Shown one piece after another: positions 14,825-42,694 of a stretch of DNA of 64,000 nucleotides. The notes under the pieces were generated by a model, which saw only the letters and a list, made by a program, of their open reading frames with translations, did no database searches and had not been told where the DNA came from. The position numbers were made by a program, and so were the translations under genes. The DNA lies in the NCBI GenBank assembly GCA_029953675.1, contig JAMWBK010000010.1, forward strand, positions 62,001-126,000. The letters run 5' to 3'. This DNA is from Rhodosorus marinus CCMP1338 (taxonomy: Eukaryota; Plantae; Rhodophyta). Within the stretch, counting starts at the first letter, position 1. Every line of letters starts with the position of its first letter.

Positions 14825-14898
14825 GCTTTCGTAGCTCAGTTGGTTAGAGCGCCAGCCTAACATGCTGGAGGTCCCGAGTTCGAGCCTCGGCGAGAGTA
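14825..14898 (+). tRNA. trnV-AAC: tRNA-Val (anticodon AAC)
   Basis: Cloverleaf: acceptor GCTTTCG/CGAGAGT, D stem GCTC/GAGC, anticodon arm CCAGC-CTAACAT-GCTGG, T arm CCGAG-TTCGAGC-CTCGG, discriminator A. A T-run just downstream fits a Pol III terminator. Confidence 0.95.
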
Positions 14899-16270: not shown

Positions 16271-19200
16271 ATGAGGGCAATAATCGGGTTGCGACTGCAT
16301 TCTCGCTCTCTGTCGTCGCTGGCGGTTGATACGAGCATCCCAGCGGCAGCGGAAGAGCTTCGGCTGGCGGTTGAAGGAACCAAGGGGAACCTTGTTCGGC
16401 TTTTGAGGCTGTTCGAGAACCGCAAGAAATGCATCGGAGTAAGAGATCAGAAGCAGGTAGGTGAGAGACATCCCTATAGTATGGCCCAACGAGACGACTG
16501 ACGTTCCATCGCGGGTTGAAACGGGTTGAAACGGGTTGAAATAGGTTGCTAAAGAACTGCTCCAAGAAACATCCAGAAGCTATGGGTCCATGACAACGGT
16601 TCAGCTTTTCAATTTGCTGAAGCGGGGAAGCCCTGCCTTTATCGTACCTGAACACTATGATCTGGTTACAGCAACCTGCGAACGGGCTGGCGATGCCACC
16701 TCGGCCGTGGACCTACTATCTGATATGTCTAAAAGGGGATTTGATCTCACACCAGCCGCAGTAGTGCAGACCGCTCATGTCGTCGCTGAACATGGTTTGT
16801 CACCAAGCCTTGCCTGAAACAGTAGTGACTGCGGCTGACTCACGCTAGATGGATTCCCATTCTAAACAAATGCCTCATGCAGGTGGTTCCTTGCAAAAGA
16901 AAACTCTCCTCAAGATGCTGGAAGAATTTGGACTGGCTCGCGATCCCCGACTCGTCCCTGCGTTCGTACACGCAGACATAGCGAAGGGCAACCTCGAAAA
17001 AGCTTGGAAAAGGTTCCAGGAGATGAACTCCAACCACAGACCTTTGCCACTCTACCAGGGTTTGATTCGACTGTGTGCTGAGAAGCAGCAACCGCGACTG
17101 CTAGAAGAGCTTGAACTGGTATGTGCGCGAAAGGATGCACTTCCTCTCGCTAGTTTTTGCAAGCTCTCAAGAGGTCGCACTTCCTTGCTTGCTAACACCG
17201 ATGTGTCAAAAAAAAAACCTAGGCCTTAAACCGCTCCAACAAGGTCACGGATAACAGCCTCCTCTTCGAATTGATGAAAGCTCATACCGATCTATGTCAA
17301 CTGGAGGTAGCGCATCTTCTTCAACAGTTATTTTATGCGTTCGAGTCATTGCCTTCCTAAAAACAGAATGCAATGAAGGATTGAACGGGAGGTCTGTGCT
17401 CCAGCTAAGCTTGCTTTCGCGTGTACCCTGTGCATAGGAGCTGAGTAGGTACTCCAGTATCATCGAACGACAGAGCCAAAAGTCAGACTCCAGAACCTAT
17501 TCGGTTCTGATGCGCGCGAATATCATTGCCGGGAAGTTCGATGAGGCGGAGAGCATTGGTGCATCTGTGAAACGAGCTGGGATACCCGAACAGCCTGAAT
17601 TCCATAGCCAGCTACTGCAGCTTCAAATTCGACAGGGGAAGATAAAGAAATCGGAACAGATAGATCAGTTCATGCTTGAGCAGAATGCCGATCAAAATCA
17701 TGCGGCTGTGCGATCTAGCAAGGTCTTTTCCCTTGCCATGCTTGGTGATAAGCAAGGTAGGCTCGCTTCCGGGAAGAAAATTCGGACTCGTTTGACTCAT
17801 GTTTTTTTTTAACCTGTTATGTTATGATGCTAAACTCATCCCCGGCCCCAGGAGTATCCCATCTCCTTGAGGATCTTGAAACCGGCGCCGACGTTCATGC
17901 TCTCAGCTGGAACGCCGCTATAGAGGGCTCAGCGCTGAATGGAGACCTTGTGTGGATGGAAGATCTACAATTGGAGGCGGAAAAGCGAGGGCTGAAAGTG
18001 ACGAAGCGCATGTATCTGAACCTTTTGAAAGGATACAGTCGAGCCGGAAAATTGGAAATTTGCCTGGACGTGTTGGACGAAGCCGTCAGGATGGGCTTGA
18101 ACCTCGGGGCTGAGCAGCACGCTAGTCTCGCAATTGCAAGGGCCCGCTGCGGGGACGTCCCCGGGGCAATAGAGCTGTGTGTCAAGAAGGCTTCTTGGTC
18201 TCGCGAAGCTGCAAATGCGATCTTGCTCGCGACTTCAACTGAGAATGAACGGGAAGCAAATTCTTGGTTTCAGCGGATGAAACAGAGTGTTGGAGTTGAT
18301 GACACTTCATACAACTGTATGCTCGACATGTATGCTAGCAATGGAGGTACGAGGAAAACTCACAAGTAGCACGAACCATTTCTTCCGGGCCGCCACTTGA
18401 GTTGTTGCTTTTTACGCCGAAGACTTGAGATTAGCAAACTCAGTTCATAGGGGCTGTCTTTTTTTGACTTTGGCCGTCGCACCTTCTCTCTGCTGAATCA
18501 CTCTTGCTTTGCAGATGTAGCAGGTATATCAGAGCTCGCAGAGCAAATGGCGGAGAACAGGAGGTCTATGGCGGAGACCATCAAAAAGGCCCTGTGGCGT
18601 GCACATCTCAAACGGAAAGACCACAAGTGGTTTGCAGAGCAAGTCGAGGAGATTGAAAAGGAGGGGAAAGAAGTACCCGCAGAACTCCTGCTTCTGCACC
18701 TCGAGACACTGTTGAAGAGCGGGCGGCATGAAGAGTTCTCGGTGGTTCTGGACAAACTACGATCCGCCGACGACGGCACCAAGCTCAACGCATACCACAT
18801 GCTGTTCCGCAATCTTCGTCATAGGCGTGCGAGCGTAGACAGCTGTCTCGCTCGTCTGCGGGAAATGGACGAGGAATTCTTGCGTCCCGACCTACAATGC
18901 CTAGACGAGATTGTTCTCCTCAGCGCAGAAGGCGATAGTGTTGGGGCTCTCCATCGTGTTCTATCGCACTTGAAGGTCCAATACAACCTCGCACCAAATA
19001 GAGCCACTCGACTGAGAGTCGTCAGGGCTTTGGTGAAAGCTGGACTGCATGCGAAAGTTATGCAAGTGTTTGATGAGATGATCCCCGACGAACCGGAAGA
19101 AAGCCATGTGCTACTGTTTGATGATGATCGACTGATTGCCCTCTGCTTAACGGATGAGCTGTTCGAAGCCAAGCAGTGCACGACCAAGCTGATGAGCAGT

Positions 19201-20605
19201 GGTGTCGATTTAATGAGCGATAGCGCGGCGGAAGCATTCATTTTGCTTCTAGCAAGGCACGGGGAGATGAAAGGTGAGGATGGCAATGAACGATTTTTTA
19301 GTCCGAAACCGAACAAGGGTGGTGCCCCGTTGAAATTTTGTGAGGCTCATGCATCTGAACTGTAGCCGTTCTCTACTGCCGCTGTGTAGAAGCGATGGAT
19401 TTCATGAAACAGCAAGCAAGGGTTTCACGTGTTCGAGCGAATGTCGTTTACAGTGCACTACAAGGCCAAGCTCTTGGCGAACTAAAAGCCACAACTCCGC
19501 AGAGGTGGGAGAGGCAGAGTTTTTCCAATGCACGAGACGCAGCATGGACAGCGATGGTTGTGAGATCGATTGGGACACAGTCCATGGAATCAATCGACCA
19601 GCTGATTACGGAGGTCGAAGAACACGGTGGCAAGATGGATCCTATCGCGTATCAACTTGTCCTGGAAGCCGCTGTTAAGGAGATTTCCAGTGTAACGTCA
19701 CTGAAGAGAAAAGTAGAGCTCTTCGACTATACCATATCCCTGCACAAGAGGATGAGGGACTCCAAGGTTCAAGAAACAGTGGACATGTATCAAATCTTGT
19801 TGGACCTGTACTCCTCCGAACCCCGTCAACCGAGAAAGCTTTTGTGTAAGTCAGAGCTGTTGTACTGCCCAGCCCCGCCCAACAGTAGTGGCAGTCCTTA
19901 CTTCACGGGAACAAGCGTTTGTTCTCATGCTTCATCTCTTGTCTCATGTAACGAACAGTGATTGAGAGAGTACCGGAGAGAATGAGCCTTGCCGGCCTTA
20001 CGCCCACTGACGAAATCTTGGCAGGGATGATCGTTGCTTTTGGGCGGCAGGGTGCATTAGACCAAGCTGAGGCGCTTTATTGGTCTTTGAAGGAGCGTAG
20101 TGCTGGAGTTACGCAGGCGATGATGAAGGCCCTTAACGGTGCCAGGAGATGGCAGGATGTCTTAACCATTTTCAAGCGAGCCACAGGTGATGGGGCAATG
20201 TCGAACTTGAACGAGTCAGCTCTGATTCAGGTAGTTATGGCACATGCCGATCACAAGAAGGACCCCGCAGGACTGCGAAAGTTGATCAAGGAGATGGAGG
20301 GCAGAGGTCTACCAGTTGGCGGGGCACTTCGAAGAGTATTCATTCGCGCCCTCGGGCGGTTGGGTGAAGCGGACGCAGCGTACGAGGAGACGTGCGCTAC
20401 GCTTTTCACGGATCCGCACGAAGTAGAGGAGCTTTTCAGGGCAGCTTTGCACAGCGCGCGATATAGGCCTGATTTGAAGCTTAAGCTACTTCGTCAATTC
20501 AGCATCAGATACCCTCGCAAAAATTGGGAGAGCTTTGATCTCTTCCTTGACCCGAATTCGATCGTAGAGCCTGAGGACTTTGTCGACGATGAAGCTGACT
20601 TGTAA
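16271..20605 (+). CDS. Large pentatricopeptide-repeat (PPR) protein with a mitochondrial-like presequence, multi-exon
   Basis: N-terminus MRAIIGLRLHSRSLSSLA. PPR-like repeats include WNAAIEGSALNGDL, MYLNLLKGYSRAGKLEICLDVLDEAVRMGL, SYNCMLDMYASNG and ILAGMIVAFGRQGALDQAEALY. Confidence 0.8.
16512..16541. repeat. 10-bp tandem repeat x3 inside the first predicted PPR intron
   Basis: cgggttgaaa repeated three times immediately before the AG acceptor at 16543-16544. Confidence 0.85.
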
Positions 20606-22351
20606 GAACAGAGTTGATGACAACTAATGAAAATATCGTTCCAATGCGACGTGTAAATAAAGAAGGCTTCTTCGGCTGCGAACACAGCTCCCAAGTTCAA
20701 AGCCCGCCACAAAATATACCGCCAAGGTCATGAGAGTATATACAAACACGCAAATCAAGAAGGTTGTTTTTCACGCAACAAACACGGCTCATTTTCAGCA
20801 AGAAAGCGGCGGAGGCTCCGTGAATGAACGAACCATAGCGCCATGCCGACGGCCCGGCAACATCCTTCTTTCTTGGGAAAGTGAAATCAGAAATACCCTC
20901 GGGTCATATTTCTAACTGTGCCAGACGAGCATCTATCAAGTTTTTTGATTGATTCCAGCTTTTCGTTCACAACCTGCCCGCTGTTCATTCATGCAGACCC
21001 CCGCTTGGTGTTTACTGGAGCAGTGTCAGCCGAGATCTGTTCGTTTTTCATCCGGTTTATTGTAATCAGTCCTATTTCATTCACATGTATATGCCCAGGA
21101 TGGTGGGAATGGGTGGAGGCGTTACGATAGACTGGATGGTGGATGGTGGGGGATAGGAGCGAGATTCAACTTGAGTGTTGACTAGTTAGCTTTGTTGGCT
21201 GCATCAACCAAGTGCTTGGAGTTCTACTCCGGTCTTGGTAGGCCAGTACCAAGCGATACATAAGTTTCCCATGGTCACAGCCTTGCGGATTCCCCTCTCA
21301 AAAGCAATAGATTAAAACCCATGAACTGATCCTGCTATCTCTCTTTCAAGCCCTTACTTCCTCAAAAGGATAAAACAGAAACCTAGGACCTTGGTAATAC
21401 AACTACACCAACCAAAACTCCCCTCGCGTTTTGGAAAACGCTGTGGCCATGGAGGCGTACAGCTTACAAAAGCGGACTTTCCGAAGGCTTCGCGCTCTCC
21501 TCACCCGCTCTCACTATTCATTCAAAAAAGAGGTGTTCTTCCAACGGAGCACCCACACCACTTCAAATGACCCAAAATGGCTTTTCTTTTTAGTCCATTC
21601 ATCAACATCCAATCAGCTCGATTTGTGAAATTCTCCAACTACCAATCCCTATCCAAGATTCTTCAAATATATCAAATAATATACTAAAATACATATTTGG
21701 TTGGCCCGAAATCCAATCACCGCCCCTGGTAAACACCTTTCAAGATCAAGAAATAGGGTCTTAAAATATGACGAGTTCCAACAAATCGAGTTCGTCCGTG
21801 GTCATCATTTTTTCTCCAAATTCCCAGATTGACAAAAATATTCATAATCATGAGATTGCACCACATGTTTATTTAATTTTATAAATAAAATGGCATTTGA
21901 AATGTGCATAATTATGACCTTGGATTTTTTTGTGGCCTTGGCTGGTCGTTTAGTAGAATGCTTGATTGGTTGTTACTTTTTCTATAGATGCAAATATGAA
22001 GACGCTGAAATGGATCAATTCTCGATTTGTCCATTGCTGTTCTGAGCACAGAGATGGAAGCCACCGCGCCAGGTTTCTCATACGGGAGGATGCACGCCTC
22101 GGCGGTACTTTATCTGAAGTAAGCAAGGCTGGAGTGGATATAAGGATCAATCGAACGTACTGATTGAAATAGATAGAGAAACGGGATCGGCGATTCGAAT
22201 GATTGTTTGAATTTGTGGGTTAGCACATCTCCGAATGGGAAATCTGAGTTTGGTTTTGGTTTGCTTTGGGACCGGATATGGATCTGTATATAAAAAACAT
22301 TGTTGAACTCCAGGATAAGGACCACCGGATTCCTGTTGAGTGTGTAACGGG

Positions 22352-25300
22352 ATGAAGGCGGATATGGACTGTGTAGGATCTGGTAGGTCCATTTGCTTTC
22401 TTGGAGCGTTGAATGTTGAGATGATTCGGAGGCTCGTTCAGAGAAGACGCGGAGCCTGGGTTGCGGCTAGGAAAGGGCGGTACTTGTCAAGTTTGAAAGC
22501 GACGTTCACAGTCGATACGGACTTGGAGCCCACCGCGGATCAGCCACAGGCAATTGATGCCGCGTCGGAGTACTTGAGGGGTAACAATTTTACCCTGCTG
22601 AAGGGAGCGACGGGGACAGGCAAAACCTTTGTGATGGCTCATACCATCGCTCGCACTAAGAAACCGACATTAATTCTCTCGCACAACAAGACTCTAGCCG
22701 CTCAGCTAGCAAGAGAACTTCGATCCTTCCTCCCGAACAGTGCTGTGGAACTGTTCATCTCCTACTATGACAGCTTCCAACCCGAGGCCTACAACCCAAA
22801 GTCCGGTACCTACATCGCCAAGTTGGCCACTGTGAACAAGGAGATCGATGCTCTCAGGCATCGAGCAACAAAAGCCCTAGTGGAGCGCGAGGATGTCGTT
22901 ATAGTGGCATCTGTTTCATGTATTTATGGACTCGGACTGCCCAAAGAGTACCTGCAGTCTGTGAAACATTTCGAGGTTGGACAAGTCATCACCATGGAGG
23001 AGATTGTAGCTCAAGTTCAGGAGCTCATGTACGAAATGGTCAGGACGCCACTAGACCTCAAGCAGGCGTGTTTCTACTCGACGGGCTCGGACGAGATTTC
23101 CGTTTGGCCCCCTTACCTCAGTGCACCGATTCGAATTGCCCTGGAGCACGGTACGATTCGTTCCATCCTGGCCCTCGACACTCGCGAGTTTCATGGCAAC
23201 ACGCAGCTGGCCTTCCCGGATGCGGGCAACGTCTCAACAAACGACAAGAAACTTGTTCTGTATCCCGCAAGACACCATGTCACGCCAGAATCTCGTCGCG
23301 AGGAGGCAGCGACGAGAATCCGCGCGGAGATGGAGCACAGAGTGGAGGAGCTCATACAGGAGGGCCAAGGCGATGCGGCTGAAAGATTGCGAACAAGAAC
23401 TACTGAAGACATGAAAATGTTGGAGGAGCTGGGCTTTTGTGCGGGGGTGGAGAACTACTCGAGGCATCTCGCACTCCGTGACGAAGGCGATCCTCCAGAC
23501 ACGCTGATCACGTTTTACAACGAGGCTTTCGGAGCAAAGAAGTGGCTGCTCATTGTTGACGAGAGCCATGTAGCACTCCCGCAACTCTGCGCGATGTATC
23601 GCGGCGATCGCAAGCGGAAGGAAACGCTGGTCAGGCACGGTTTCAGGTAAGGGCCTTACCGGGCGAGAAGCCACGTTGGTGAAGTGTCCATGGCGCTCTT
23701 ATCTGATCTCGACGTTCATTAACGCTCTGCGCAGGCTGCCTTCGGCTCTGGATAACCGCCCTCTAAAGGAATCCGAATTCTGGGACATGATCGAATCAGC
23801 TATGTTTGTGTCTGCGACACCGAGCAAGAAGGAATTGGCAATGTCCAAACACAGTATTGTTGAGATGGCAATTAGACCCACCGGGGTCATGGATCCCAAG
23901 ATCGAGATTGCGAAAACCGAAAATCAGCTCGAACAAGTCGTTCGGGAGGTAAGGACTGGGGAACACATAGAGTCGGGCTCGCTTACAGAAGAGCATGCGC
24001 AGATCGTTCTCACGAGCTCCAATTCGTTTTGCTCCGGACAGATTGGGGACAGAGCAGAGAGGGATGAGCGGACACTTGTGATGGCAATCACGAAGCGAGA
24101 TGCAGAGGACCTCGCGGAGTATCTGCAAAGCAGAGGAGTGAAAGCCGCGTACCTCCATTCTGGCTTGAAAATTGTGCAGCGGTCTGAAGTAATCTCAAGA
24201 CTTCAGCGAGCTGACATTGACTGCATTGTCGGGGTGAATCTGCTACGGGAAGGAATAGACCTCCCGGAAGTATCCCTTGTTTGCATTATGGACGCGGACA
24301 AGCAAGGGTTTCTGCGGTCCAAGTCCAGCCTGCTTCAAATGGTTGGCAGGGCGGCGCGGCACGTGAATGGTACGGCCGTTTTCTTCGCGGACAAGACCTC
24401 GCCGGCGATGCGAGAATGTATGGCCGAGACAGATGTGCGCAGAGCAAAACAGCTTCGATATCTCGTTGAGAATGACCTACAGCCGACTTCCGCGAGGGGA
24501 AGGGAAGTCGCCTCGATATTCGAAATGGAGAAGGAGAATCGAACGGATGGCGAAGTTGATGGAATGGACTGGGAAGCGGTATCACGAGCTCTCGAGGAGC
24601 ACAAGCAGAGGAAGAGAGCGAGTAAGGATGACAACCTCTCCTCGAATGGTAATGCAAAAGACGGTGACGAGGAAAAGTCTTTACCACGCTACATGCCGGC
24701 CCACGTGGCTAGCTTGAAACAGCAAATCAAGTCTCTGCCCGTGAAAACTGGAGTGTACATGTGGAAGTCGGGTAGTGACGAGGACGCGGAGATCTTGTAC
24801 ATAGGAAAGGCGAAGAACTTGAGGTCCAGGGTGAGCTCGTATCTTCGAGAAACGGCAGTTACCACTCGAGGGACACGCTTGGCGGCCATGCTTAACCGTG
24901 CCAGAACTATAGACGTCGTGGTGACCCCTGGAGGAGAACGAGATGCGCTGCTGCTTGAATCTGACCTGATCAAGAAGCACCGGCCACTGTACAATGTGTT
25001 GCTCAGAGATTCGAGGTATTATCCGTTTATTGTGATAACGGAGAAGACAGACAAACAGCTGCCAAAGCTTATGACCTCAGTTCGTTCGGACCTGGAGGGG
25101 GCCCGGTACTTTGGCCCGTTCACGTCACCTGCAGCACTCCGGAGAGTCATAGAACTCCTCGAGGCAGCGCTGAACTTGAGGCACCTGAGATTCCAGCTTC
25201 GTTTTGGTGGTGAGAGCGTTGAGGGGGAGTACTTGGAAGCGGTCGCAATGGCAACCAGAATTTTAGAGGGAGACACTCTTAGCGTGGCTAGGGAATTGTT

Positions 25301-25946
25301 CGAGCTTGGCCGGGAGCAATCTGCAAGAATTGTACTTGCTATCAACAATAGAAGCGTTGACGAGGACGAGAATGCTCGGAGCTGGAAACGTGTTCAAGAG
25401 AATGCAAAAGCAGCCAGAGAACTCTCGCAGCTGTTCGACATACCTAAAATTCCGAGGCGGATCGAGGCCTTTGATATCAGTCACTTTTACGGTCAATATA
25501 CGGTGGCAAGCAGAGTGGTTTTCCTCGATGGTGAGCCAGCACGACATCTGTATCGAAGCTACAAGCTTGAGCAGGTCAACGATGACTTCAGCTCCATAAA
25601 CAAAGCCGTATCAAAGCGTTTGAAGTCCAAGGAGCAGCTACCTGATCTGATGATAATTGACGGAGGAAAGGGACAGCTCAGTGCAGCTGTGAACGCAATT
25701 AAGGATGTTGGGAGTGTGGACGAGTTACGTGTGTGCGCCATTGCGAAGCAGGAAGAAGAAATAGTTGTGCCCGGACAGCTTAAGTCCCTAGATACCAACA
25801 TCGAAAGCGCTGCCATGCTTCTAGTTCGGCATGTTCGCGACGAGAGTCATCGACACGCAATCTCAAAGATGAGGAATGCGCGAAGGGATGTGTTTCTAGA
25901 AGATGCCAATTTATCTGCCCAGTCAAAGCAAAGTGTTGAGGACTGA
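22352..25946 (+). CDS. uvrB-uvrC: UvrB-UvrC fusion excinuclease (about 1137 aa) with an N-terminal organellar targeting-like extension; introns 23647-23734 and 23949-24041
   Basis: UvrB motifs: GATGTGKT, NKTLAAQL, YYDSFQPEAY hairpin, VDESH, GFRLPSALDNRPL (restored by splicing), VSATP, NLLREGIDLPEV, QMVGRAAR. These run in frame into UvrC motifs: GVYMWK...YIGKAKNLRSRVSSY, IEAFDISH, IIDGGKGQ, RDESHR. Confidence 0.93.
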
Positions 25947-37426: not shown

Positions 37427-39747
37427 CCTTATCAACGCCAGTCGAACCGACTATTAGGAAAGAACAAGAGCCAACCCCACCCCTACCCCTAATGAAACGA
37501 AGCAACTGTGCTCCCTCCTACGCACTATCATCGCTCCTTTTGCGCCCACTGTGTCCTTACCCCAGAATAGACTTCGGGTACCATTGCCGAAGAAGCTGTC
37601 TTTCCTCGCTCTCCCTCTCACGTCAACTATGAATCAGCAGTTGGATGCCAAACACTGGGGAACACTCCTATTTTCAATGAAAAATGGTATATTTCAAATG
37701 TCATATTCTTAACGGCTATTTCAATCAATTGTTTCTTGTAAATCATTTTCAAGTTGATTGAATCTATTCGAGAACTCGCAGGGCCTCCCGCGCTAGTTTT
37801 GGTAGCAAGCTCATGTGAAGCGCTGAAACGTGAAGAGTTGATGTACATCCTGTACCTCGAATCAGGAGCTAGGTGATGCCTATTTTCATACGGACGGGTG
37901 TTCTTCCGCGTTTACAGTGCCCATGCGGCTTGTACGCAAGCCCCGCGGCGGCCCCGTAGCAGAGATGGCACCAGTGACCTGTGTGAGCCGCTCTTGAAGG
38001 AGCGAGGTGTTATGACCTATTGCGGCCGAGTATCAGCTGTCGCGGGAAGACAACCCTCTGAACTTGGAAGCCAACGAGTGTTGAAGAAGGGAAGTGCGTT
38101 GTTTTCGCGCTCAGGAAATTGTCGGACTCTTTTGAGGTTTCATCCGTTGACGAAGATATGAAATGCTTGAGAAAGAAAAGAAAAAAAGCCATCCAACGTG
38201 CCATGCTAGACTCCAAGACATAGGTTCCTCCTGAAAAAGGGAATGGACGGCTAGCAAATATTATATATATATTATGTCATATATGTATTAGATATTGCTC
38301 ACTATGGAAACCGCTGTGGAAAGCCGCAGTTCGCATCAGTTTCCTACACTGCCTAGAGACGCCATACTCTGCGACGAGTGATGAACTACCCGCACAGCGT
38401 TGATCCTCGGTTTGAAACTGTAAATTTTTTTGATGTGCTTCTGATCTCGCTCTCCGTTTCCTCAAATATACTCAGATGCATGCTGCGTGCTCATAAGGAA
38501 TGTGTAGTAAGAACGATTCCTGACTAGAGCTTCTTTGCCTAGCTTTGACACCCCAACTGCTGGGTGTGGGTGGGGGGGGGATAAGCCCTTGACATGGTTC
38601 TAAAATTGGAAAAAGTTCACCTCACCAGTTCGAGAAAGACTAAATTTTATTTGAAATACATAGATCCCCTCCATGCCCAACGCTGTAGGGGGTTTTGAAA
38701 TTGATGAACGAAATATTGTGCCATAATCGGACCCGATCCAAATCTTCTGTGTCATATCTTTTTTATAGAGTAGTATAGTAGGGGTCATGATTTCTCCGAA
38801 ATACCTGTAAGATTAGTTAAAAACGGGAGAAAAAGAATTCCACAGTGCTCACAAGGGGGTGAGTACACTTCACTCTAAAGTCTTGGAGAAAGGTTGAGGG
38901 GGGGAATGAGACAAACAAGATTAGGTCGAGGTACGAAATATGAACCCCGATGAGGGAAGTCTCTCCATAACAGAGGACAAAAACACTTCAAAATACTACA
39001 CAAAAGAAGAACAAGCTATGGTTGAAATATTAAAATATATCAGCCATAGACAATTTTATTTCATCTATTCAATAATATATCACCTAAAAATAGATGATTC
39101 AAGTTTGTCACGTTCGGAAGGGTGGGGGTGTGTGGTAACCCTACTGCCAAGATGCGGAGAAGAATCAAAAGTTATCCTAAATGGACCGGCCCCTAATGGT
39201 CTTGAAAAGTATCGAATTCCAGAGCAAGGAGGAATGTATTCTCTATCTTGGGGTTAACAGAGTGACGATTTTCTTTTTAGGGAGACCCGGGGCGGGGGGG
39301 GGGGGGGAGAAGGAGTTTGACTGGCGGGGCAAAAAAATAACATGTTTTTGAAACGTTTTTTTTTTTTGGGAGGGTTGGGGACAACTATGATGGGGTTTGT
39401 TGGTATTTTTGTGAGGTTTGATAAAGAGGAGGGGGAAAGGAAAACGAAGGTGCGAAGAGTGGGGGGGTGCACACACCGACGTGATTTACATGTTGTGTTG
39501 GAGGGGGGATTGTTTCGAGCGCCTGCTTGGTGGGGATAGGGAGTTGATAATGTATTGATGAGAAAGGGAAAGATGGATTATGAAGAGGGAAGAGACGCAG
39601 TGAAGTTGTTGCTTTGTTGAGATTTTGATTAGCGGAGTTGTCAGGTGTGAACACGGGGGGGTGGGAGGTTTGGATTTCACTCTGCTATATATATTTGGTT
39701 TTGGGGCTGTGGTGGGAGGTTTTCGTCAGCGGGTTGGGTTTGAGGGA

Positions 39748-40689
39748 ATGTTGGGCGTACGAGTTGGTGGTGGACCGAAGGAGGGGAAGAAAGTGGAGTG
39801 CAGTCAAAGCGTGTTGCCGATGGAAAAACGCCGACCACCGGGGTTGACTTTGCCGGATAGAGGTGAGTTTGCGGTGCTGGTGCGCTCGGCGAGGGAGGGT
39901 CGAGATTGCGCTGAGCTTTCGGAAGGAGCGGATGGGGTATGGTGGGTTGTGTCTAGACAGGGAAGGTCGAGATCTTTTAACGAGGATGCGGTGGGTATTG
40001 TAGATGGAAAAGGTGTTTTTGCTGTGTTTGACGGACATGGCGGGAGGAAAGCCTCCCAGTTTGCTAGTGAGCACCTCATAAGACACTTCGAGGCACTATC
40101 GCATGGCGAAGTGGATATGCAGGAAGCGCTCAAACAGGCCTTTGTTAAGACTGACGAGGAATTTTACAACGGAAGTGGATCCGCAAGAGAAAAGTACGTG
40201 GGAACGACCGCCATTGCTGCAGTGCTCAGAAACGGGAAGCTGGTGGTAGGACACGTCGGAGATTCTCGCGCGGTGCTGGCGTCAAATGGAAAAGCAGTGG
40301 AACTCTCGCGAGATCATGTCACCTCAAGGGCAGACGAACTGAACAGAGTCAGGGCAAACGGTGGTTACATTCTTGGGGACCGAGTGAATGGAGTATTGAA
40401 AGTGACGAGAGCCATTGGTGACCATCCAGCAAAGAGCTTCATAATTGCGGAGCCGGAAGTTCTGGAGATGGAAATCGCAGACTGCTTTCAGTATTTAATA
40501 ATTGCATCCGATGGACTCTGGCAGCACTTCACGAATGAGCAGGCAGTAGAATTTGCGTGTAAGTATGGAAATGATGTGAAGACAGCGGCCCAAATGTTGG
40601 TGGAAGAAGCGCAGACGAGAGGTTCCTGTGACGACATAAGTGTACTTGTTCTTTCTCTGGAAAACTTCAAGAAAAAGAGTGAGGAATGA
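39748..40689 (+). CDS. Protein phosphatase 2C (PPM family), single exon; start uncertain
   Basis: NED, FAVFDGHGG, GTTA, HVGDSRAVL, VTRAIGD, IIASDGLW, SCDDISV. Confidence 0.93.
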   Translation: MLGVRVGGGPKEGKKVECSQSVLPMEKRRPPGLTLPDRGEFAVLVRSAREGRDCAELSEGADGVWWVVSRQGRSRSFNEDAVGIVDGKGVFAVFDGHGGRKASQFASEHLIRHFEALSHGEVDMQEALKQAFVKTDEEFYNGSGSAREKYVGTTAIAAVLRNGKLVVGHVGDSRAVLASNGKAVELSRDHVTSRADELNRVRANGGYILGDRVNGVLKVTRAIGDHPAKSFIIAEPEVLEMEIADCFQYLIIASDGLWQHFTNEQAVEFACKYGNDVKTAAQMLVEEAQTRGSCDDISVLVLSLENFKKKSEE

Positions 40690-40786
40690 AGAAAAGCAAA
40701 CTATCTGAAGCTTTCAAGAGTAGTCAAAGCTGAACCGCATTAGGAGCTCAGATTCTCAGCTATGAAGAGGCGCGGATCGGCGCCCG

Positions 40787-40823
40787 TTTTTTCTACTCGG
40801 CTCCCCTTTTTTCTACTCGGCTC
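40787..40823. repeat. 17-bp direct repeat, period 20
   Basis: ttttttctactcggctc at 40787 and 40807. Confidence 0.85.
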
Positions 40824-41549
40824 TGGGGAGCAAGCATTTTTAGTTTGACATGTATGACTCAACAGTCTACCAAGTTCTGTTTTTTTATGAGGCTTCGGGA
40901 GGTCTCACAGAAGAACATCGTTCCGATGCGGAGTTTTTTCCTGCCTCGTGTGCGTTTCATGGGCAGGGGAAGCCAACTAACAGCTTGTCATTGATTCTTG
41001 TATTTAAGAAAACACTGTGGAGGGAAGATTAAATTTTGAAGGTACTCCCCACCTAACCCCCCAAGCCGGGCTTTATGAAATGCAAACAACTAAAACCAAC
41101 TTTGGGGTTGGCGTTGAAAACCCCGCAACACGATAAAAGCCTCCGAACGGGGATTTCTCAGCGTGTGGTGGGGAGCTGATAAGGAAGCGTTGTGGGCGAG
41201 ATTTTCCTTTCCCGAACAGGCTTTGACAGATTTGCCGTCTAAGTACGCTAACTCACGACAACGTAGCGGCTCTTTCTATGCTATTCTCCATTGTTTTTTT
41301 TTATGGCATTGGGCCAGTACTCGTGGACAGCTGCGTAAAATCAGGAGTCAATTTATTCCGCAGTAGGAGCAGTACGCTGCTGCGTGTGATATTTGAAAGA
41401 TCATCCTTTTCGCGAGCAGGACTGCCCGGTAGTGAGGCTTTAAGAGCAAGGAGCGTACACGCGCAGAGATTATTTTGCTTGCTCAGACCTTGGCAATGGC
41501 GTAATAGCCAAACAAGGATCAGTTGCAGAATTCAAGTTTCAAAGATGTG

Positions 41550-41619
41550 TCGGGGCAGTATGGGGTTGTGAACTCAAGTTTGGAAAACGTCTCGGGGTAG
41601 TATGGGGTTGTGAACTCAA
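41550..41619. repeat. 28-bp direct repeat, period 42, overlapping the SIMPL gene stop codon
   Basis: tcgggg(c/t)agtatggggttgtgaactcaa at 41550 and 41592. Confidence 0.85.
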
Positions 41620-42694
41620 CTTTCTCCCTGATCTGACCCAATCTGAAACACAGCCTCGATTTCCGCAACGACCTTGGTCACAGAGAAATCGAGCTTGAGG
41701 GAGCTTGATTTCTCCTGACCATCTTCAGCCTCCATATCCTCAGCCATCATAGCCATCGGCTGACGATGCATAGAATAGCCTCGGGACGCTTCGGGTGATC
41801 GAATTTAGTGATTTGACTCAGCGACAACGCAAAGGTGCTAGGGCGATTTGTGCGGCTCACTTTCAAACTTACGATTCTCCTTAATCCTCAGCAGCCTACC
41901 TCTCGTAGTCCCTGCTCCTCCGAGAAGGTCATCAACCTTCCCTATAGCGTTCTGGACAGCTTTCAGTCTGGCCTCGGTTTCGAACTTGCCGATATCTGAA
42001 ACTCCGAGATTGAAGTCCTCAATCCGGACGTCGTCACCACCTGTCTGGATAACCTATGGAAACCGGCCAATGACACAGGTACATATCAGCCCGAACCTCA
42101 GTACGGGTCGTTGGGATCACCCTTTTTCTTCTGCACCTTACCTCGTCCATAACCTTGCCCCCCTTTTCAATGTCCGCAACATGTATCCGGAGTCTGTTGA
42201 AGCAGGAATATCCGTCTACGTAACTCCTAGGAGAAGTTGAGAATTTTGAGATAAGCGCTTCTTGCGATGGTCGTATTTTACAGCACATCATTAGCTTACT
42301 TTCCAGTCCGCCGACTGTATTCGTATACGGGGTAGAGGCCAAACCCTACAGTCGACACGTCCGGAGCGACAATTCCGAGAGTGGCCAGCTGATCGATGAT
42401 CCTCTGCAACGTATCCAAGCTGGTCTTTCAGCTCTTGTTAACAAACAAAGCGTTGCGGGGCAGAGCAAAACCTACATTTGTTACCACGGCTACGAACTCT
42501 TTCGCTTCCTTACCGCTTTTGGAGCGCTTCTCGACGTTTGCATTGAAGACAACCTCATCTGGTGGTGCGTCGACCACACCCTTTCCTTGCACTGTAATCC
42601 GAGGGACAGTCTCAAGAAGCGCTGCATCAGACAGCACCTCCACTATCCCGAGACTGAAAAAGCTCAACGCAAGAATCCAACTCTTCACCACCAT
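41616..42694 (-). CDS. SIMPL/DUF541 domain protein with a signal peptide, multi-exon
   Basis: Signal-like MVVKSWILALSFFSLGIVEVLSDA, then ITVQGKGVVDAPPDEV, EARLKAVQNAIGKV and the terminal strand KVVAEIEAVFQI. Confidence 0.75.

What the first reader, a model, noticed from the sequence alone, without database searches (positions are those of the whole stretch)
22763..23092. UvrB half has lost the UvrA-binding arginines and has an altered damage-sensing hairpin
Seen: domain 2 reads YEMVRTPLDLKQACFYSTGSD where bacterial UvrB has Y.RND.DF.RGTFRVRGD, so all three aligned arginines are replaced (M, Y, T). The hairpin base reads YYDSFQPEAY instead of YYDYYQPEAY. Known (from memory, Bacillus caldotenax numbering): R183, R194 and R196 mediate UvrA contact, and Y95/Y96 act in lesion verification. 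Inference: the fusion may find substrates without UvrA or use another loader such as a stalled polymerase or Mfd-like factor, and may have shifted specificity.
Basis: partly seen in the sequence, partly recalled or inferred. Interest (0 to 1): 0.7.

Follow-up and report, generated by a model that had tools for sequence, protein, structure and literature searches.

The report
Fused UvrB–UvrC with eroded UvrA surface

Summary
The window is nuclear DNA of the red alga Rhodosorus marinus. Positions 22352-25946 (+) hold a three-exon gene for a 1137-aa UvrB-UvrC fusion, identical to NCBI NDN08_003753.

Both quoted motifs are at the stated coordinates. R194->Y and R196->T are robust. The claimed R183->M depends on the alignment: a profile built from 42 free UvrBs puts Arg231 on R183 (posterior about 0.8). 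The hairpin base is YYDSFQPEAY, so Y95->S is non-conservative and Y96->F is conservative.

The changes are shared across the clade. In 79 fusion orthologues (diatoms, Chromera, unnamed algae):
- R194 is never Arg, R196 is Arg in 6 and R183 in 11, while 41 free cyanobacterial UvrBs are invariant at R183 and R194 and carry K/R at 196.
- Domain 2 is the least conserved region (pairwise identity 0.31 against 0.71 in free UvrBs) and varies in length, yet keeps its fold.
- The UVR domain, the UvrC Cys cluster and the HhH domain are missing.
- The helicase motifs and both nuclease motifs are intact.
- Y95, Q97 and F249 (->H in 75/79) also changed.

Many diatom orthologues and the Chromera one carry plastid-type leaders.

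Best reading: a self-contained plastid excinuclease that no longer depends on docking to UvrA. Whether these algae lack UvrA could not be tested. This is a new variant of a known kind; I found no paper describing it.

The parts
22352..23646 (+). Exon 1 of the UvrB-UvrC fusion gene (aa 1-431 plus 2 nt). It holds the presequence, Walker A, the beta-hairpin, domain 2 and DESH.
   Evidence: The ORF and the GT at 23647; the spliced translation is identical to P0001.
23647..23734 (+). Intron 1, 88 nt, GT..AG. It splits the codon of Arg in GFR|LPSALDNRPL.
23735..23948 (+). Exon 2.
23949..24041 (+). Intron 2, 93 nt, in frame and without a stop, GT..AG. If read through it would add 31 aa (VRTGEHIES...CSGQ).
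   Evidence: The phmmer alignment to UvrB skips this stretch.
24042..25946 (+). Exon 3 (includes the stop codon). It holds the rest of helicase domain 3, the linker and the UvrC half.
22352..22504 (+). N-terminal extension of about 51 aa before the first UvrB-homologous residue. It is Arg-rich and is a putative organelle presequence.
   Evidence: Homology to UvrB starts at aa 52. pLDDT is below 55. Many diatom orthologues and the Chromera one have a signal peptide plus an A|F motif. The compartment in R. marinus itself is inferred.
22604..22627 (+). Walker A, GATGTGKT.
22757..22837 (+). Beta-hairpin (aa 136-162, equal to B. caldotenax 90-116), with no indels.
22763..22792 (+). Hairpin base YYDSFQPEAY: Y95->S141 (22772-22774) and Y96->F142 (22775-22777).
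22958..23266 (+). Domain 2 (aa 203-305, equal to B. caldotenax 157-245). The fold is kept but the sequence has diverged, with 103 residues here against 88 in free cyanobacterial UvrBs. The boundaries are taken from memory.
   Evidence: pLDDT is mostly above 90. Foldseek TM 0.90-0.93 to UvrB structures. Pfam UvrB_inter scores 21.9 bits, below the cutoff of 22.9.
23030..23092 (+). The quoted domain 2 motif YEMVRTPLDLKQACFYSTGSD. R231 (23042-23044) is the probable R183 equivalent. Q238/A239 (23063-23068) replace R190/G191. Y242 (23075-23077) replaces R194. T244 (23081-23083) replaces R196.
23105..23113 (+). WPP, part of a motif specific to the fusion clade (WPP.E..P) that replaces [IV].PA.ED of free UvrB.
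23276..23278 (+). His309, which replaces F249 of the base-flipping pocket (H in 75/79 fusions, F in 41/41 free).
   Evidence: The pocket's role is from PMC3458569.
23558..23569 (+). DESH (helicase motif II).
24345..24359 (+). GRAAR (helicase motif VI).
24495..24746 (+). Low-confidence linker (aa 655-738) that takes the place of UvrB domain 4. It has no UVR match.
   Evidence: pLDDT 38-54. No PF02151 hit at E<=0.1.
24747..24995 (+). GIY-YIG nuclease domain (aa 739-821), the 3'-incision site of UvrC.
   Evidence: Pfam PF01541, 25.1 bits. The GVY/YIGKAK/R/E/N motifs are conserved.
24996..25427 (+). Shortened UvrC middle region (aa 822-965). It has no Cys cluster, no UVR and no PF22920 domain.
25428..25862 (+). 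UvrC RNase H/EndoV-like nuclease domain (aa 966-1110), the 5'-incision site. The protein ends 27 aa later, without HhH.
   Evidence: Pfam PF08459, 140.7 bits. PDB 2nrt and 2nrr. The motifs are shown.

Best explanation
Shown: this is a nuclear, intron-containing gene of Rhodosorus marinus. It encodes one 1137-aa chain made of a UvrB helicase joined to a trimmed UvrC nuclease, both of bacterial type. The closest free UvrBs are cyanobacterial. The ATPase/helicase motifs, a full-length beta-hairpin, the GIY-YIG site and the RNase H-like site are intact and conserved across about 80 algal orthologues. Every module that bacteria use to pass DNA between separate subunits has decayed or been deleted:
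- the UvrA-docking face of domain 2
- the UvrB UVR domain (domain 4)
- the UvrC UVR domain and Cys cluster
- the HhH domain

Inferred: the protein is imported into the plastid. This is clear for many diatom orthologues and the Chromera one; for R. marinus it rests on orthology. There it works as a self-contained excinuclease that no longer relies on docking to UvrA.

The likely sequence of events is this. It loads by itself on unwound or junction DNA. It threads one strand behind the hairpin and translocates until a lesion blocks it. The tethered nuclease domains then cut on both sides. Lacking domain 4, described as an autoinhibitory gate, should leave its ATPase and DNA binding constitutively open.

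Clade-wide changes at Y95, Q97 and F249 suggest a retuned verification pocket.
For: - Identity and gene model.
- UvrB and UvrC homology: PDB E = 4e-155 and 4.5e-30. NCBIfam UvrB 736 bits and UvrC 288.9 bits. AF2 pLDDT 84.5, with Foldseek TM 0.90-0.93 to UvrB crystal structures, including the UvrA-bound 3uwx_B.
- Clade-wide erosion of domain 2 while the other domains are kept: pairwise identity 0.31 against 0.55-0.72 for the other regions; free UvrBs 0.71 against 0.76-0.93; length 80-162 against a fixed 88; Arg count median 5 against 9.5 (4 in R. marinus, 14 in B. caldotenax); R194 0/79, R196 6/79, R183 11/79.
- Pfam UvrB_inter scores 21.9 bits here, 14.8-21.4 or nothing in orthologues, and 118.3 in a cyanobacterial UvrB. 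UVR is absent in the fusions and scores 46 bits in free UvrB.
- Separation-of-function signature: R190 and G191 are kept in 66 and 78 of 79 fusions, and R190E impairs UvrB-DNA complex formation (PMC3458569). The UvrA-face arginines, by contrast, are lost.
- The UvrC catalytic motifs are kept, while Cys4, UVR and HhH are absent.
- Fused transcripts exist in MMETSP transcriptomes marked 'type:complete'.
- Plastid-type bipartite leaders: Chromera ...NSYA|FLPARL, and many diatoms ...A|F....
- Precedent: UvrBC locates UV lesions without UvrA and improves survival of uvrA-null E. coli (PMC5814901). UvrB self-loads on a 'G10' substrate without UvrA (PMC3458569). Domain 4 is described as an autoinhibitory gate (reference title).
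Against: - UvrA absence was not shown; no eukaryotic genome could be searched.
- R. marinus probably keeps Arg at the R183 position and keeps R213, so some UvrA contact cannot be excluded for this species.
- R194 is a doubtful UvrA-contact marker.
- R. marinus, unlike most fusions, has lost R190/G191, so its domain 2 may also bind DNA less well.
- Domain 2 keeps its fold and carries a new conserved motif (WPP.E..P), so it still serves some function, which could be binding a different partner.
- The R. marinus presequence looks as much mitochondrial as plastidial.
- There are no biochemical data for any member.
Confidence: 0.55

Rival explanations
1. The system is still UvrA-dependent. A plastid-targeted UvrA, or a diverged UvrA-like ABC ATPase, exists in these algae and docks on a co-evolved domain 2 surface. 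The arginine changes then reflect co-evolution of the interface, not loss of the partner.
For: - The domain 2 fold is retained with high model confidence.
- Arg231 probably occupies the R183 position and R213 is kept in R. marinus.
- A new motif conserved across the clade (WPP.E..P) shows continued constraint.
- UvrA absence was not tested.
Against: - A co-evolving interface should stay conserved within the clade. Instead, domain 2 is the most variable region (0.31 pairwise identity), with length varying from 80 to 162 residues and acidic or low-complexity insertions.
- No position on the UvrA face is fixed across the fusions.
- The other hand-over modules were lost in parallel.
- No paper in the library reports UvrA in diatoms.
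Confidence: 0.2
2. The enzyme has been repurposed. It no longer scans for lesions but acts as an ATP-driven, structure-specific nuclease on plastid DNA intermediates such as forks, flaps, R-loops or bubbles, for example in replication restart, recombination or copy-number turnover.
For: - Residues tied to lesion verification changed across the clade: Y95 (H/S), Q97 (V) and pocket residue F249 (H).
- HhH and the Cys cluster of UvrC are lost.
- R. marinus and P0002 also lack the UvrC middle domain.
- From my own knowledge, UvrBC without UvrA is known to cut certain junction substrates.
Against: - The hairpin keeps its length and five of six aromatic residues, and E99 is invariant.
- Both nuclease sites are kept, which fits dual incision around a lesion.
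- The helicase motifs are invariant.
Confidence: 0.17
3. The gene is a decaying relic. Domain 2 and the other modules are degenerating because the whole gene is under relaxed selection and is on its way to loss.
For: - The UvrB score falls just below the NCBIfam equivalog cutoffs (736.1 against 743; 725.4 against 750.1).
- There are several module losses.
Against: - The reading frame is intact, with canonical introns.
- There are 79 orthologues across red algae, diatoms and chromerids, with invariant catalytic motifs (Walker A, DESH, GRAAR, GIY-YIG, DDH).
- Complete transcripts exist.
- The decay is confined to interaction modules.
Confidence: 0.04

Closest known systems
Bacterial UvrB (closest free relatives are cyanobacterial; solved structures include B. 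caldotenax 2fdc/1t5l and the UvrA-UvrB complex 3uwx)
   Same: - 45-47% identity over about 600 residues.
- All helicase motifs are present.
- The beta-hairpin has the same length, with Y92, Y93, Y101 and Y108, and an aromatic residue at 96.
- Domains 1a, 1b, 2 and 3 have the same fold (TM 0.90-0.93).
   Different: - The sequence of domain 2 has eroded: 7/22 invariant residues kept; R194->Y, R196->T, E215->A, R190/G191->Q/A.
- Y95->S and F249->H.
- There is no C-terminal UVR domain (domain 4).
- It is covalently joined to UvrC.
- It is nuclear-encoded, with introns and a presequence.
- It scores just below the NCBIfam UvrB equivalog cutoffs.
Bacterial UvrC (GIY-YIG - Cys4 - UvrB-binding UVR - EndoV/RNase H-like - HhH; architecture as in PMC1564403)
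   Same: The GIY-YIG domain and the RNase H-like domain both carry their catalytic motifs. TIGR00194 is just above its cutoff (288.9 against 285.45). There are PDB matches to 2nrt, 2nrr and 1yd6.
   Different: There is no Cys cluster, no UVR domain and no HhH. In R. marinus and P0002 the middle PF22920 domain is also missing. The 2006 survey found UvrC in bacteria and archaea only (310 and 8 members) and none in eukaryotes.
E. coli UvrBC complex acting without UvrA (Springall et al. 2018, PMC5814901)
   Same: It is a UvrB plus UvrC unit able to find UV lesions and to raise survival without UvrA. The fusion looks like a hard-wired version of this.
   Different: In E. coli this is a minor back-up route using separate proteins that still have intact UvrA-binding and UVR domains. 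Here the tether is covalent and the interaction modules are gone. No activity data exist for the fusion.
UvrB-homology module of Mfd (domains 1a-2-1b)
   Same: It has the same domain 2 fold, which binds UvrA through conserved Arg/Phe residues (PMC3025350). Foldseek finds Mfd structures after UvrB.
   Different: Mfd keeps the UvrA-binding residues and lacks the hairpin and ATPase motifs. The fusion shows the reverse pattern. A free cyanobacterial UvrB matches the Mfd model through domain 2 (79 bits). No such match is among the 25 families listed for the fusions, out of 39 and 31 found.

Membership tests
UvrB | SF2 helicase/ATPase motifs (Walker A GxxGxGKT, DESH, motif VI GRAAR) | tested here: met
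   GATGTGKT, DESH and GRAAR are present and (nearly) invariant in the 88-sequence alignment.
UvrB | Beta-hairpin of canonical length with the aromatic set Y92, Y93, Y95, Y96, Y101 and Y/F108 | tested here: inconclusive
   There is no indel, and five of six positions are aromatic (Y, Y, F, Y, Y). Y95 is Ser here and H/S/T/M/N in 68 of 79 fusions, aromatic in 11 (Y 9, F 2); it is Y in 41/41 free UvrBs.
UvrB | Domain 2 fold | tested here: met
   The AF2 model has pLDDT mostly above 90 over aa 203-280. Foldseek TM 0.90 to 1t5l_A and 3uwx_B, which include domain 2.
UvrB | Conserved UvrA-docking residues of domain 2 (R183, R194, R196, R213, E215) | tested here: not met
   R194->Y, R196->T and E215->A. 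R213 is kept. R183 is probably kept as R231 (posterior about 0.8). Pfam UvrB_inter scores 21.9 bits, below the cutoff of 22.9, against 118.3 in a free UvrB.
UvrB | C-terminal UVR domain (domain 4) that binds UvrC | tested here: not met
   There is no PF02151 match at E<=0.1 in five fusions; it scores 46 bits in cyanobacterial P0116.
UvrB | Score above the NCBIfam equivalog cutoffs (NF003673, TIGR00631) | tested here: not met
   736.1 against 743 and 725.4 against 750.1; free UvrB scores 1084 and 1080.
UvrC | N-terminal GIY-YIG nuclease with catalytic Y, Y, R, E and N | tested here: met
   PF01541 scores 25.1 bits (cutoff 22.6). GVY...LYIGKAKNLRSRV...LLESDLIKKHRPLYNV is conserved across fusions.
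UvrC | Cys-rich (C4) region after GIY-YIG | tested here: not met
   The aligned block reads LNLRHLRFQLRFGG, with no Cys here or in the 11 other orthologues displayed.
UvrC | UVR (UvrB-binding) domain | tested here: not met
   There is no PF02151 match.
UvrC | RNase H/EndoV-like 5'-incision domain with the D, D, H motifs | tested here: met
   PF08459 scores 140.7 bits. IEAFDISH, IIDGGKGQ and RDESHRHA are present. Foldseek rmsd to 2nrt is 1.8 A.
UvrC | C-terminal (HhH)2 DNA-binding domain | tested here: not met
   The protein ends 27 aa after the RNase H-like domain. There is no HhH family hit, and the TIGR00194 match stops at profile position 537 of 574.
UvrABC system | A UvrA partner encoded by the same organism | not testable with these tools
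   No eukaryotic genome collection is searchable. The representative search with UvrA gave 14,659 hits at E<=1e-30, and its top 150 were dominated by bacterial double-length UvrAs.
UvrABC system | ATP-dependent dual incision around a lesion | not testable with these tools
   This needs biochemistry.

The most novel reading that the evidence does not exclude
Red-lineage plastids (red algae, diatoms, chromerids) possess a true nucleotide-excision pathway run by a single polypeptide. A UvrB-UvrC chain finds, verifies and cuts around lesions with no UvrA at all. Its retuned verification pocket (Y95H/S, Q97V, F249H) would suit the lesions or DNA structures typical of plastid nucleoids. This would be the first organellar NER system and the minimal form of the Uvr machine.
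Probability: 0.35. Interest if true: 0.8.

Novelty: new variant of a known kind. Interest (0 to 1): 0.6.

Why it matters
Bacterial NER is taught as a three-protein relay in which UvrA is needed to load UvrB. Whether UvrB-UvrC can work alone in a cell is a live question (PMC5814901).

Here evolution appears to have run that experiment for hundreds of millions of years. The two later subunits were welded together, and every hand-over module decayed while the catalytic parts were kept. That yields a natural minimal excinuclease to test in vitro. It also gives a residue-level map of what is dispensable once UvrA is out of the picture, including a possible split between the DNA-binding and UvrA-binding roles of domain 2.

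For organelle biology, plastid-type leaders on the diatom and Chromera orthologues point to excision repair inside red-lineage plastids. From my own knowledge, no NER machinery has been described in plastids.

The genes sit in public databases under automatic names ('Excinuclease ABC subunit B', 'hypothetical protein'). I found no paper that discusses them.

Tried and rejected
1. Looking for UvrA in these algae. The word-indexed search returned only enterobacterial UvrAs. The search of 1.84 billion representatives with P0157 gave 14,659 hits at E<=1e-30. Its top 150 were mostly double-length (about 1800-1900 aa) or partially duplicated bacterial UvrAs. The N-termini I inspected showed nothing eukaryote-like. 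This says nothing either way about algal UvrA.

2. Literature. Ten searches found no description of a natural UvrB-UvrC fusion, of algal UvrB or UvrC, or of UvrA in diatoms. The 'UvrA + Phaeodactylum' search returned nine papers; none is about a diatom UvrA. The ochrophyte plastid-proteome paper does not mention Uvr proteins.

3. Primary papers on the UvrA-UvrB interface (Truglio 2004, Pakotiprapha 2009) are not held. I relied on how PMC3458569 and PMC3025350 summarise them.

4. I considered whether the odd domain 2 is an artefact of an unrecognised intron or a frameshift. I rejected this: the exon is continuous, the translation equals the public model, and 79 orthologues share the features.

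5. I considered bacterial contamination and rejected it. The gene has two spliceosomal-type introns. Its neighbours are PP2C, a PPR protein and an inositol monophosphatase.

6. The AF2 model's coordinates are not exposed, so I could not check whether domain 2 packs against the UvrC half.

7. My crude rule for bipartite leaders caught 29 of 61 N-termini. Others fit by eye. No dedicated predictor was available.
Full report
**What is at the coordinates.** Two adjoining + strand ORFs (22340-23650 and 23676-25946) carry UvrB and UvrC domains. They are joined by an 88-nt GT..AG intron (23647-23734) that restores ...RHGFR|LPSALDNRPL.... A second intron, in frame and 93 nt long, lies at 23949-24041. 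Exons 22352-23646, 23735-23948 and 24042-25946 translate exactly to the 1137-aa protein P0001, 'hypothetical protein NDN08_003753 [Rhodosorus marinus]'. The window is therefore nuclear DNA of a red alga. The neighbouring ORFs encode PP2C, a PPR protein, an inositol monophosphatase and an RlmN-like protein.

**Checking the observation.** YYDSFQPEAY is encoded at 22763-22792 and YEMVRTPLDLKQACFYSTGSD at 23030-23092. I rebuilt the B. caldotenax numbering from the phmmer alignment to PDB 2fdc. YYDYYQPEAY is residues 92-101, and YDRNDIDFRRGTFRVRGD is 181-198, so R183, R194 and R196 are numbered correctly.

Y95->Ser141, Y96->Phe142, R194->Tyr242 and R196->Thr244 hold in phmmer, MAFFT and profile-HMM alignments. 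R183->Met does not hold. phmmer, and an HMM built from 42 free UvrBs, both open a two-residue insertion and put Arg231 on R183 (posterior about 0.8). The sister sequence P0002 (YERVRSPLDL) also has Arg there. So two of the three arginines are gone and the third is probably kept at a shifted position. The verdict is 'partly confirmed'.

The hairpin is only mildly altered. Its length is unchanged, Y92, Y93, Y101 and Y108 are kept, and position 96 stays aromatic.

**More than chance, and not private to this species.** The protein search returned 78 fusion-length or fusion-type relatives ahead of any free UvrB. They include many diatoms (Cyclotella, Seminavis, Pseudo-nitzschia, Nitzschia, Cylindrotheca, Thalassiosira, Mayamaea, Epithemia, Thalassionema), Chromera velia, MMETSP transcripts and metagenome contigs. 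After them come cyanobacterial UvrBs at 45-47% identity.

In an alignment of 79 fusions and 41 free cyanobacterial UvrBs:

| Position | Free UvrBs (41) | Fusions (79) |
|---|---|---|
| R183 | invariant | Arg in 11 |
| R194 | invariant | Arg in 0 (Gln in 57) |
| 196 | K/R in 40 | Arg in 6 |
| Y95 | Y in all | H 47, Y 9, S 8 |
| Y96 | Y in all | Y 72, F 7 |
| Q97 | Q in all | mostly Val (40) |

- Domain 2 is by far the least conserved region of the fusions. Mean pairwise identity is 0.31 against 0.55-0.72 for the other regions; in free UvrBs it is 0.71 against 0.76-0.93.
- Its length ranges from 80 to 162 residues, against a fixed 88.
- R. marinus keeps 7 of 22 columns that are invariant in free UvrB within domain 2, against 140 of 173 elsewhere (Fisher p = 5e-6).
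- Its domain 2 has 4 arginines in 103 residues, against 14 in 89 for B. caldotenax.
- Pfam's UvrB_inter model scores 21.9 bits here (cutoff 22.9), 14.8-21.4 or nothing in other fusions, and 118.3 in a cyanobacterial UvrB.

**What is kept.** Walker A, DESH and GRAAR are kept, and the alignment has many invariant columns in domains 1a, 1b and 3. The AlphaFold2 model (mean pLDDT 84.5, pTM 0.70) gives domain 2 a confident beta-rich fold. The UvrB half superposes on UvrB crystal structures with TM 0.90-0.93, including UvrA-bound 3uwx_B and 1t5l.

In the UvrC half, the GIY-YIG motifs and the RNase H-like motifs (IEAFDISH, IIDGGKGQ, RDESHRHA) are conserved across the clade.

R190 and G191 of domain 2 are kept in 66 and 78 of 79 fusions, and R190E impairs UvrB-DNA complex formation (PMC3458569). 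That pattern looks like retention of the DNA-binding role of domain 2 with loss of its UvrA-binding role. R. marinus itself is an exception, with Q238/A239 there.

**What else is lost.** No UVR domain is detectable in either half. No Cys cluster follows GIY-YIG. No HhH domain is present, and the chain ends 27 residues after the RNase H-like domain. R. marinus and P0002 also lack the PF22920 middle domain. The orthodox UvrC architecture is C4-UvrBb-EndoV-HhH, and a 2006 survey found no eukaryotic UvrC (PMC1564403).

The UvrB half scores just under the NCBIfam equivalog cutoffs (736.1 against 743; 725.4 against 750.1). The UvrC half scores just over its cutoff (288.9 against 285.45).

F249 lines the recess that holds the flipped-out base.

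**Where it acts.** Homology to UvrB starts at residue 52, and the first 51 residues are Arg-rich and poorly modelled. The Chromera orthologue starts MRVSLLCVAMALPLNSYA|FLPARL. Many diatom orthologues have a hydrophobic leader followed by A|F, the pattern of red-lineage complex-plastid import. A crude rule caught 29 of 61, and more fit by eye. No dedicated predictor was available. For R. marinus the compartment (plastid, mitochondrion or both) is inferred only from orthology.

**Mechanism.** The pattern is catalytic parts kept and all inter-subunit hand-over modules lost. The simplest explanation is a covalently tethered UvrBC that no longer depends on UvrA.

Three published observations make this plausible:
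- UvrBC finds UV lesions and improves survival of uvrA-null E. coli (PMC5814901).
- UvrB self-loads on suitable substrates without UvrA (PMC3458569).
- Domain 4 is described as an autoinhibitory gate on DNA binding and ATPase (reference title).

The steps of self-loading, translocation, stalling and dual incision are inferred, not shown.

**Caveats.**
- The key test, absence of UvrA and Mfd from these genomes, could not be run. My UvrA searches were swamped by bacterial sequences.
- PMC3458569 names R183 as a crucial UvrA contact. It also names 'Arg198', which may be a misprint for R196, since residue 198 is Asp in B. caldotenax.
- The same paper reports that R194 mutants still form UvrA2B2 normally. 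The residue most likely kept in R. marinus is therefore the one with the best support as a UvrA contact.
- Domain 2 still carries a motif conserved across the clade (WPP.E..P), so it has some function. That could be fold stability, DNA contact, docking of the UvrC half or a new partner.

**Comparison, novelty and score.** This is a bacterial-type UvrB plus UvrC, most similar to cyanobacterial UvrB. It fails several defining features of each family, namely the UvrA face, both UVR domains, the Cys cluster and HhH. It works most like the UvrA-independent UvrBC route of E. coli, made permanent.

The proteins are in databases under automatic names, and ten literature searches found no description of them. 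I rate it a new variant of a known kind, with interest 0.6.

The inference is reasonable and is strengthened by the comparative data, but it remains unproven.

Noticed in passing
window 23949-24041: The second intron of the gene is 93 nt, in frame and free of stops. A raw ORF reading therefore inserts 31 spurious residues (VRTGEHIES...FCSGQ) into helicase domain 3. The public model removes it, and UvrB alignments skip it.
   Followed up: yes
window 23276-23278 (His309): Phe249 of the UvrB base-flipping pocket is His in 75 of 79 fusions and Phe in all 41 free UvrBs. Together with Y95 and Q97, this is a clade-wide change around the lesion-verification site.
   Followed up: partly
window 24996-25427; P0002: R. 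marinus and its closest relative lack the UvrC middle domain (PF22920, about 200 aligned columns) that diatom, Chromera and P0003-type fusions keep. The red-algal form is therefore the most reduced one.
   Followed up: partly
window 23063-23068 (Q238, A239): R190 and G191 of domain 2 are kept in most fusions (66 and 78 of 79) but replaced in R. marinus. R190 is implicated in DNA binding. Its sister P0002 has L/G at these positions.
   Followed up: partly
window 17824-20605: A run of + strand ORFs just upstream includes one weak PPR-repeat match (below the Pfam cutoff). It is likely one intron-split gene for an organelle RNA-binding protein. No gene model was built.
   Followed up: partly
window 14825-14898: tRNA-Val (AAC) on the + strand.
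   Followed up: no
window 38001-40000: There is a strong local GC skew (+0.30) just before and into the PP2C phosphatase ORF (39625-40689). Small tandem repeats lie at 40777-40823 and 41528-41624.
   Followed up: no
P0274-P0423: Many of the best UvrA representatives are about 1800-1900 aa and match UvrA twice (tandem double UvrAs). This is unrelated to the finding.
   Followed up: no
P0116 against P0001 and P0040: A free cyanobacterial UvrB matches the NCBIfam Mfd model through its domain 2 (79 bits). No Mfd match appears among the 25 families listed for either fusion.
   Followed up: partly
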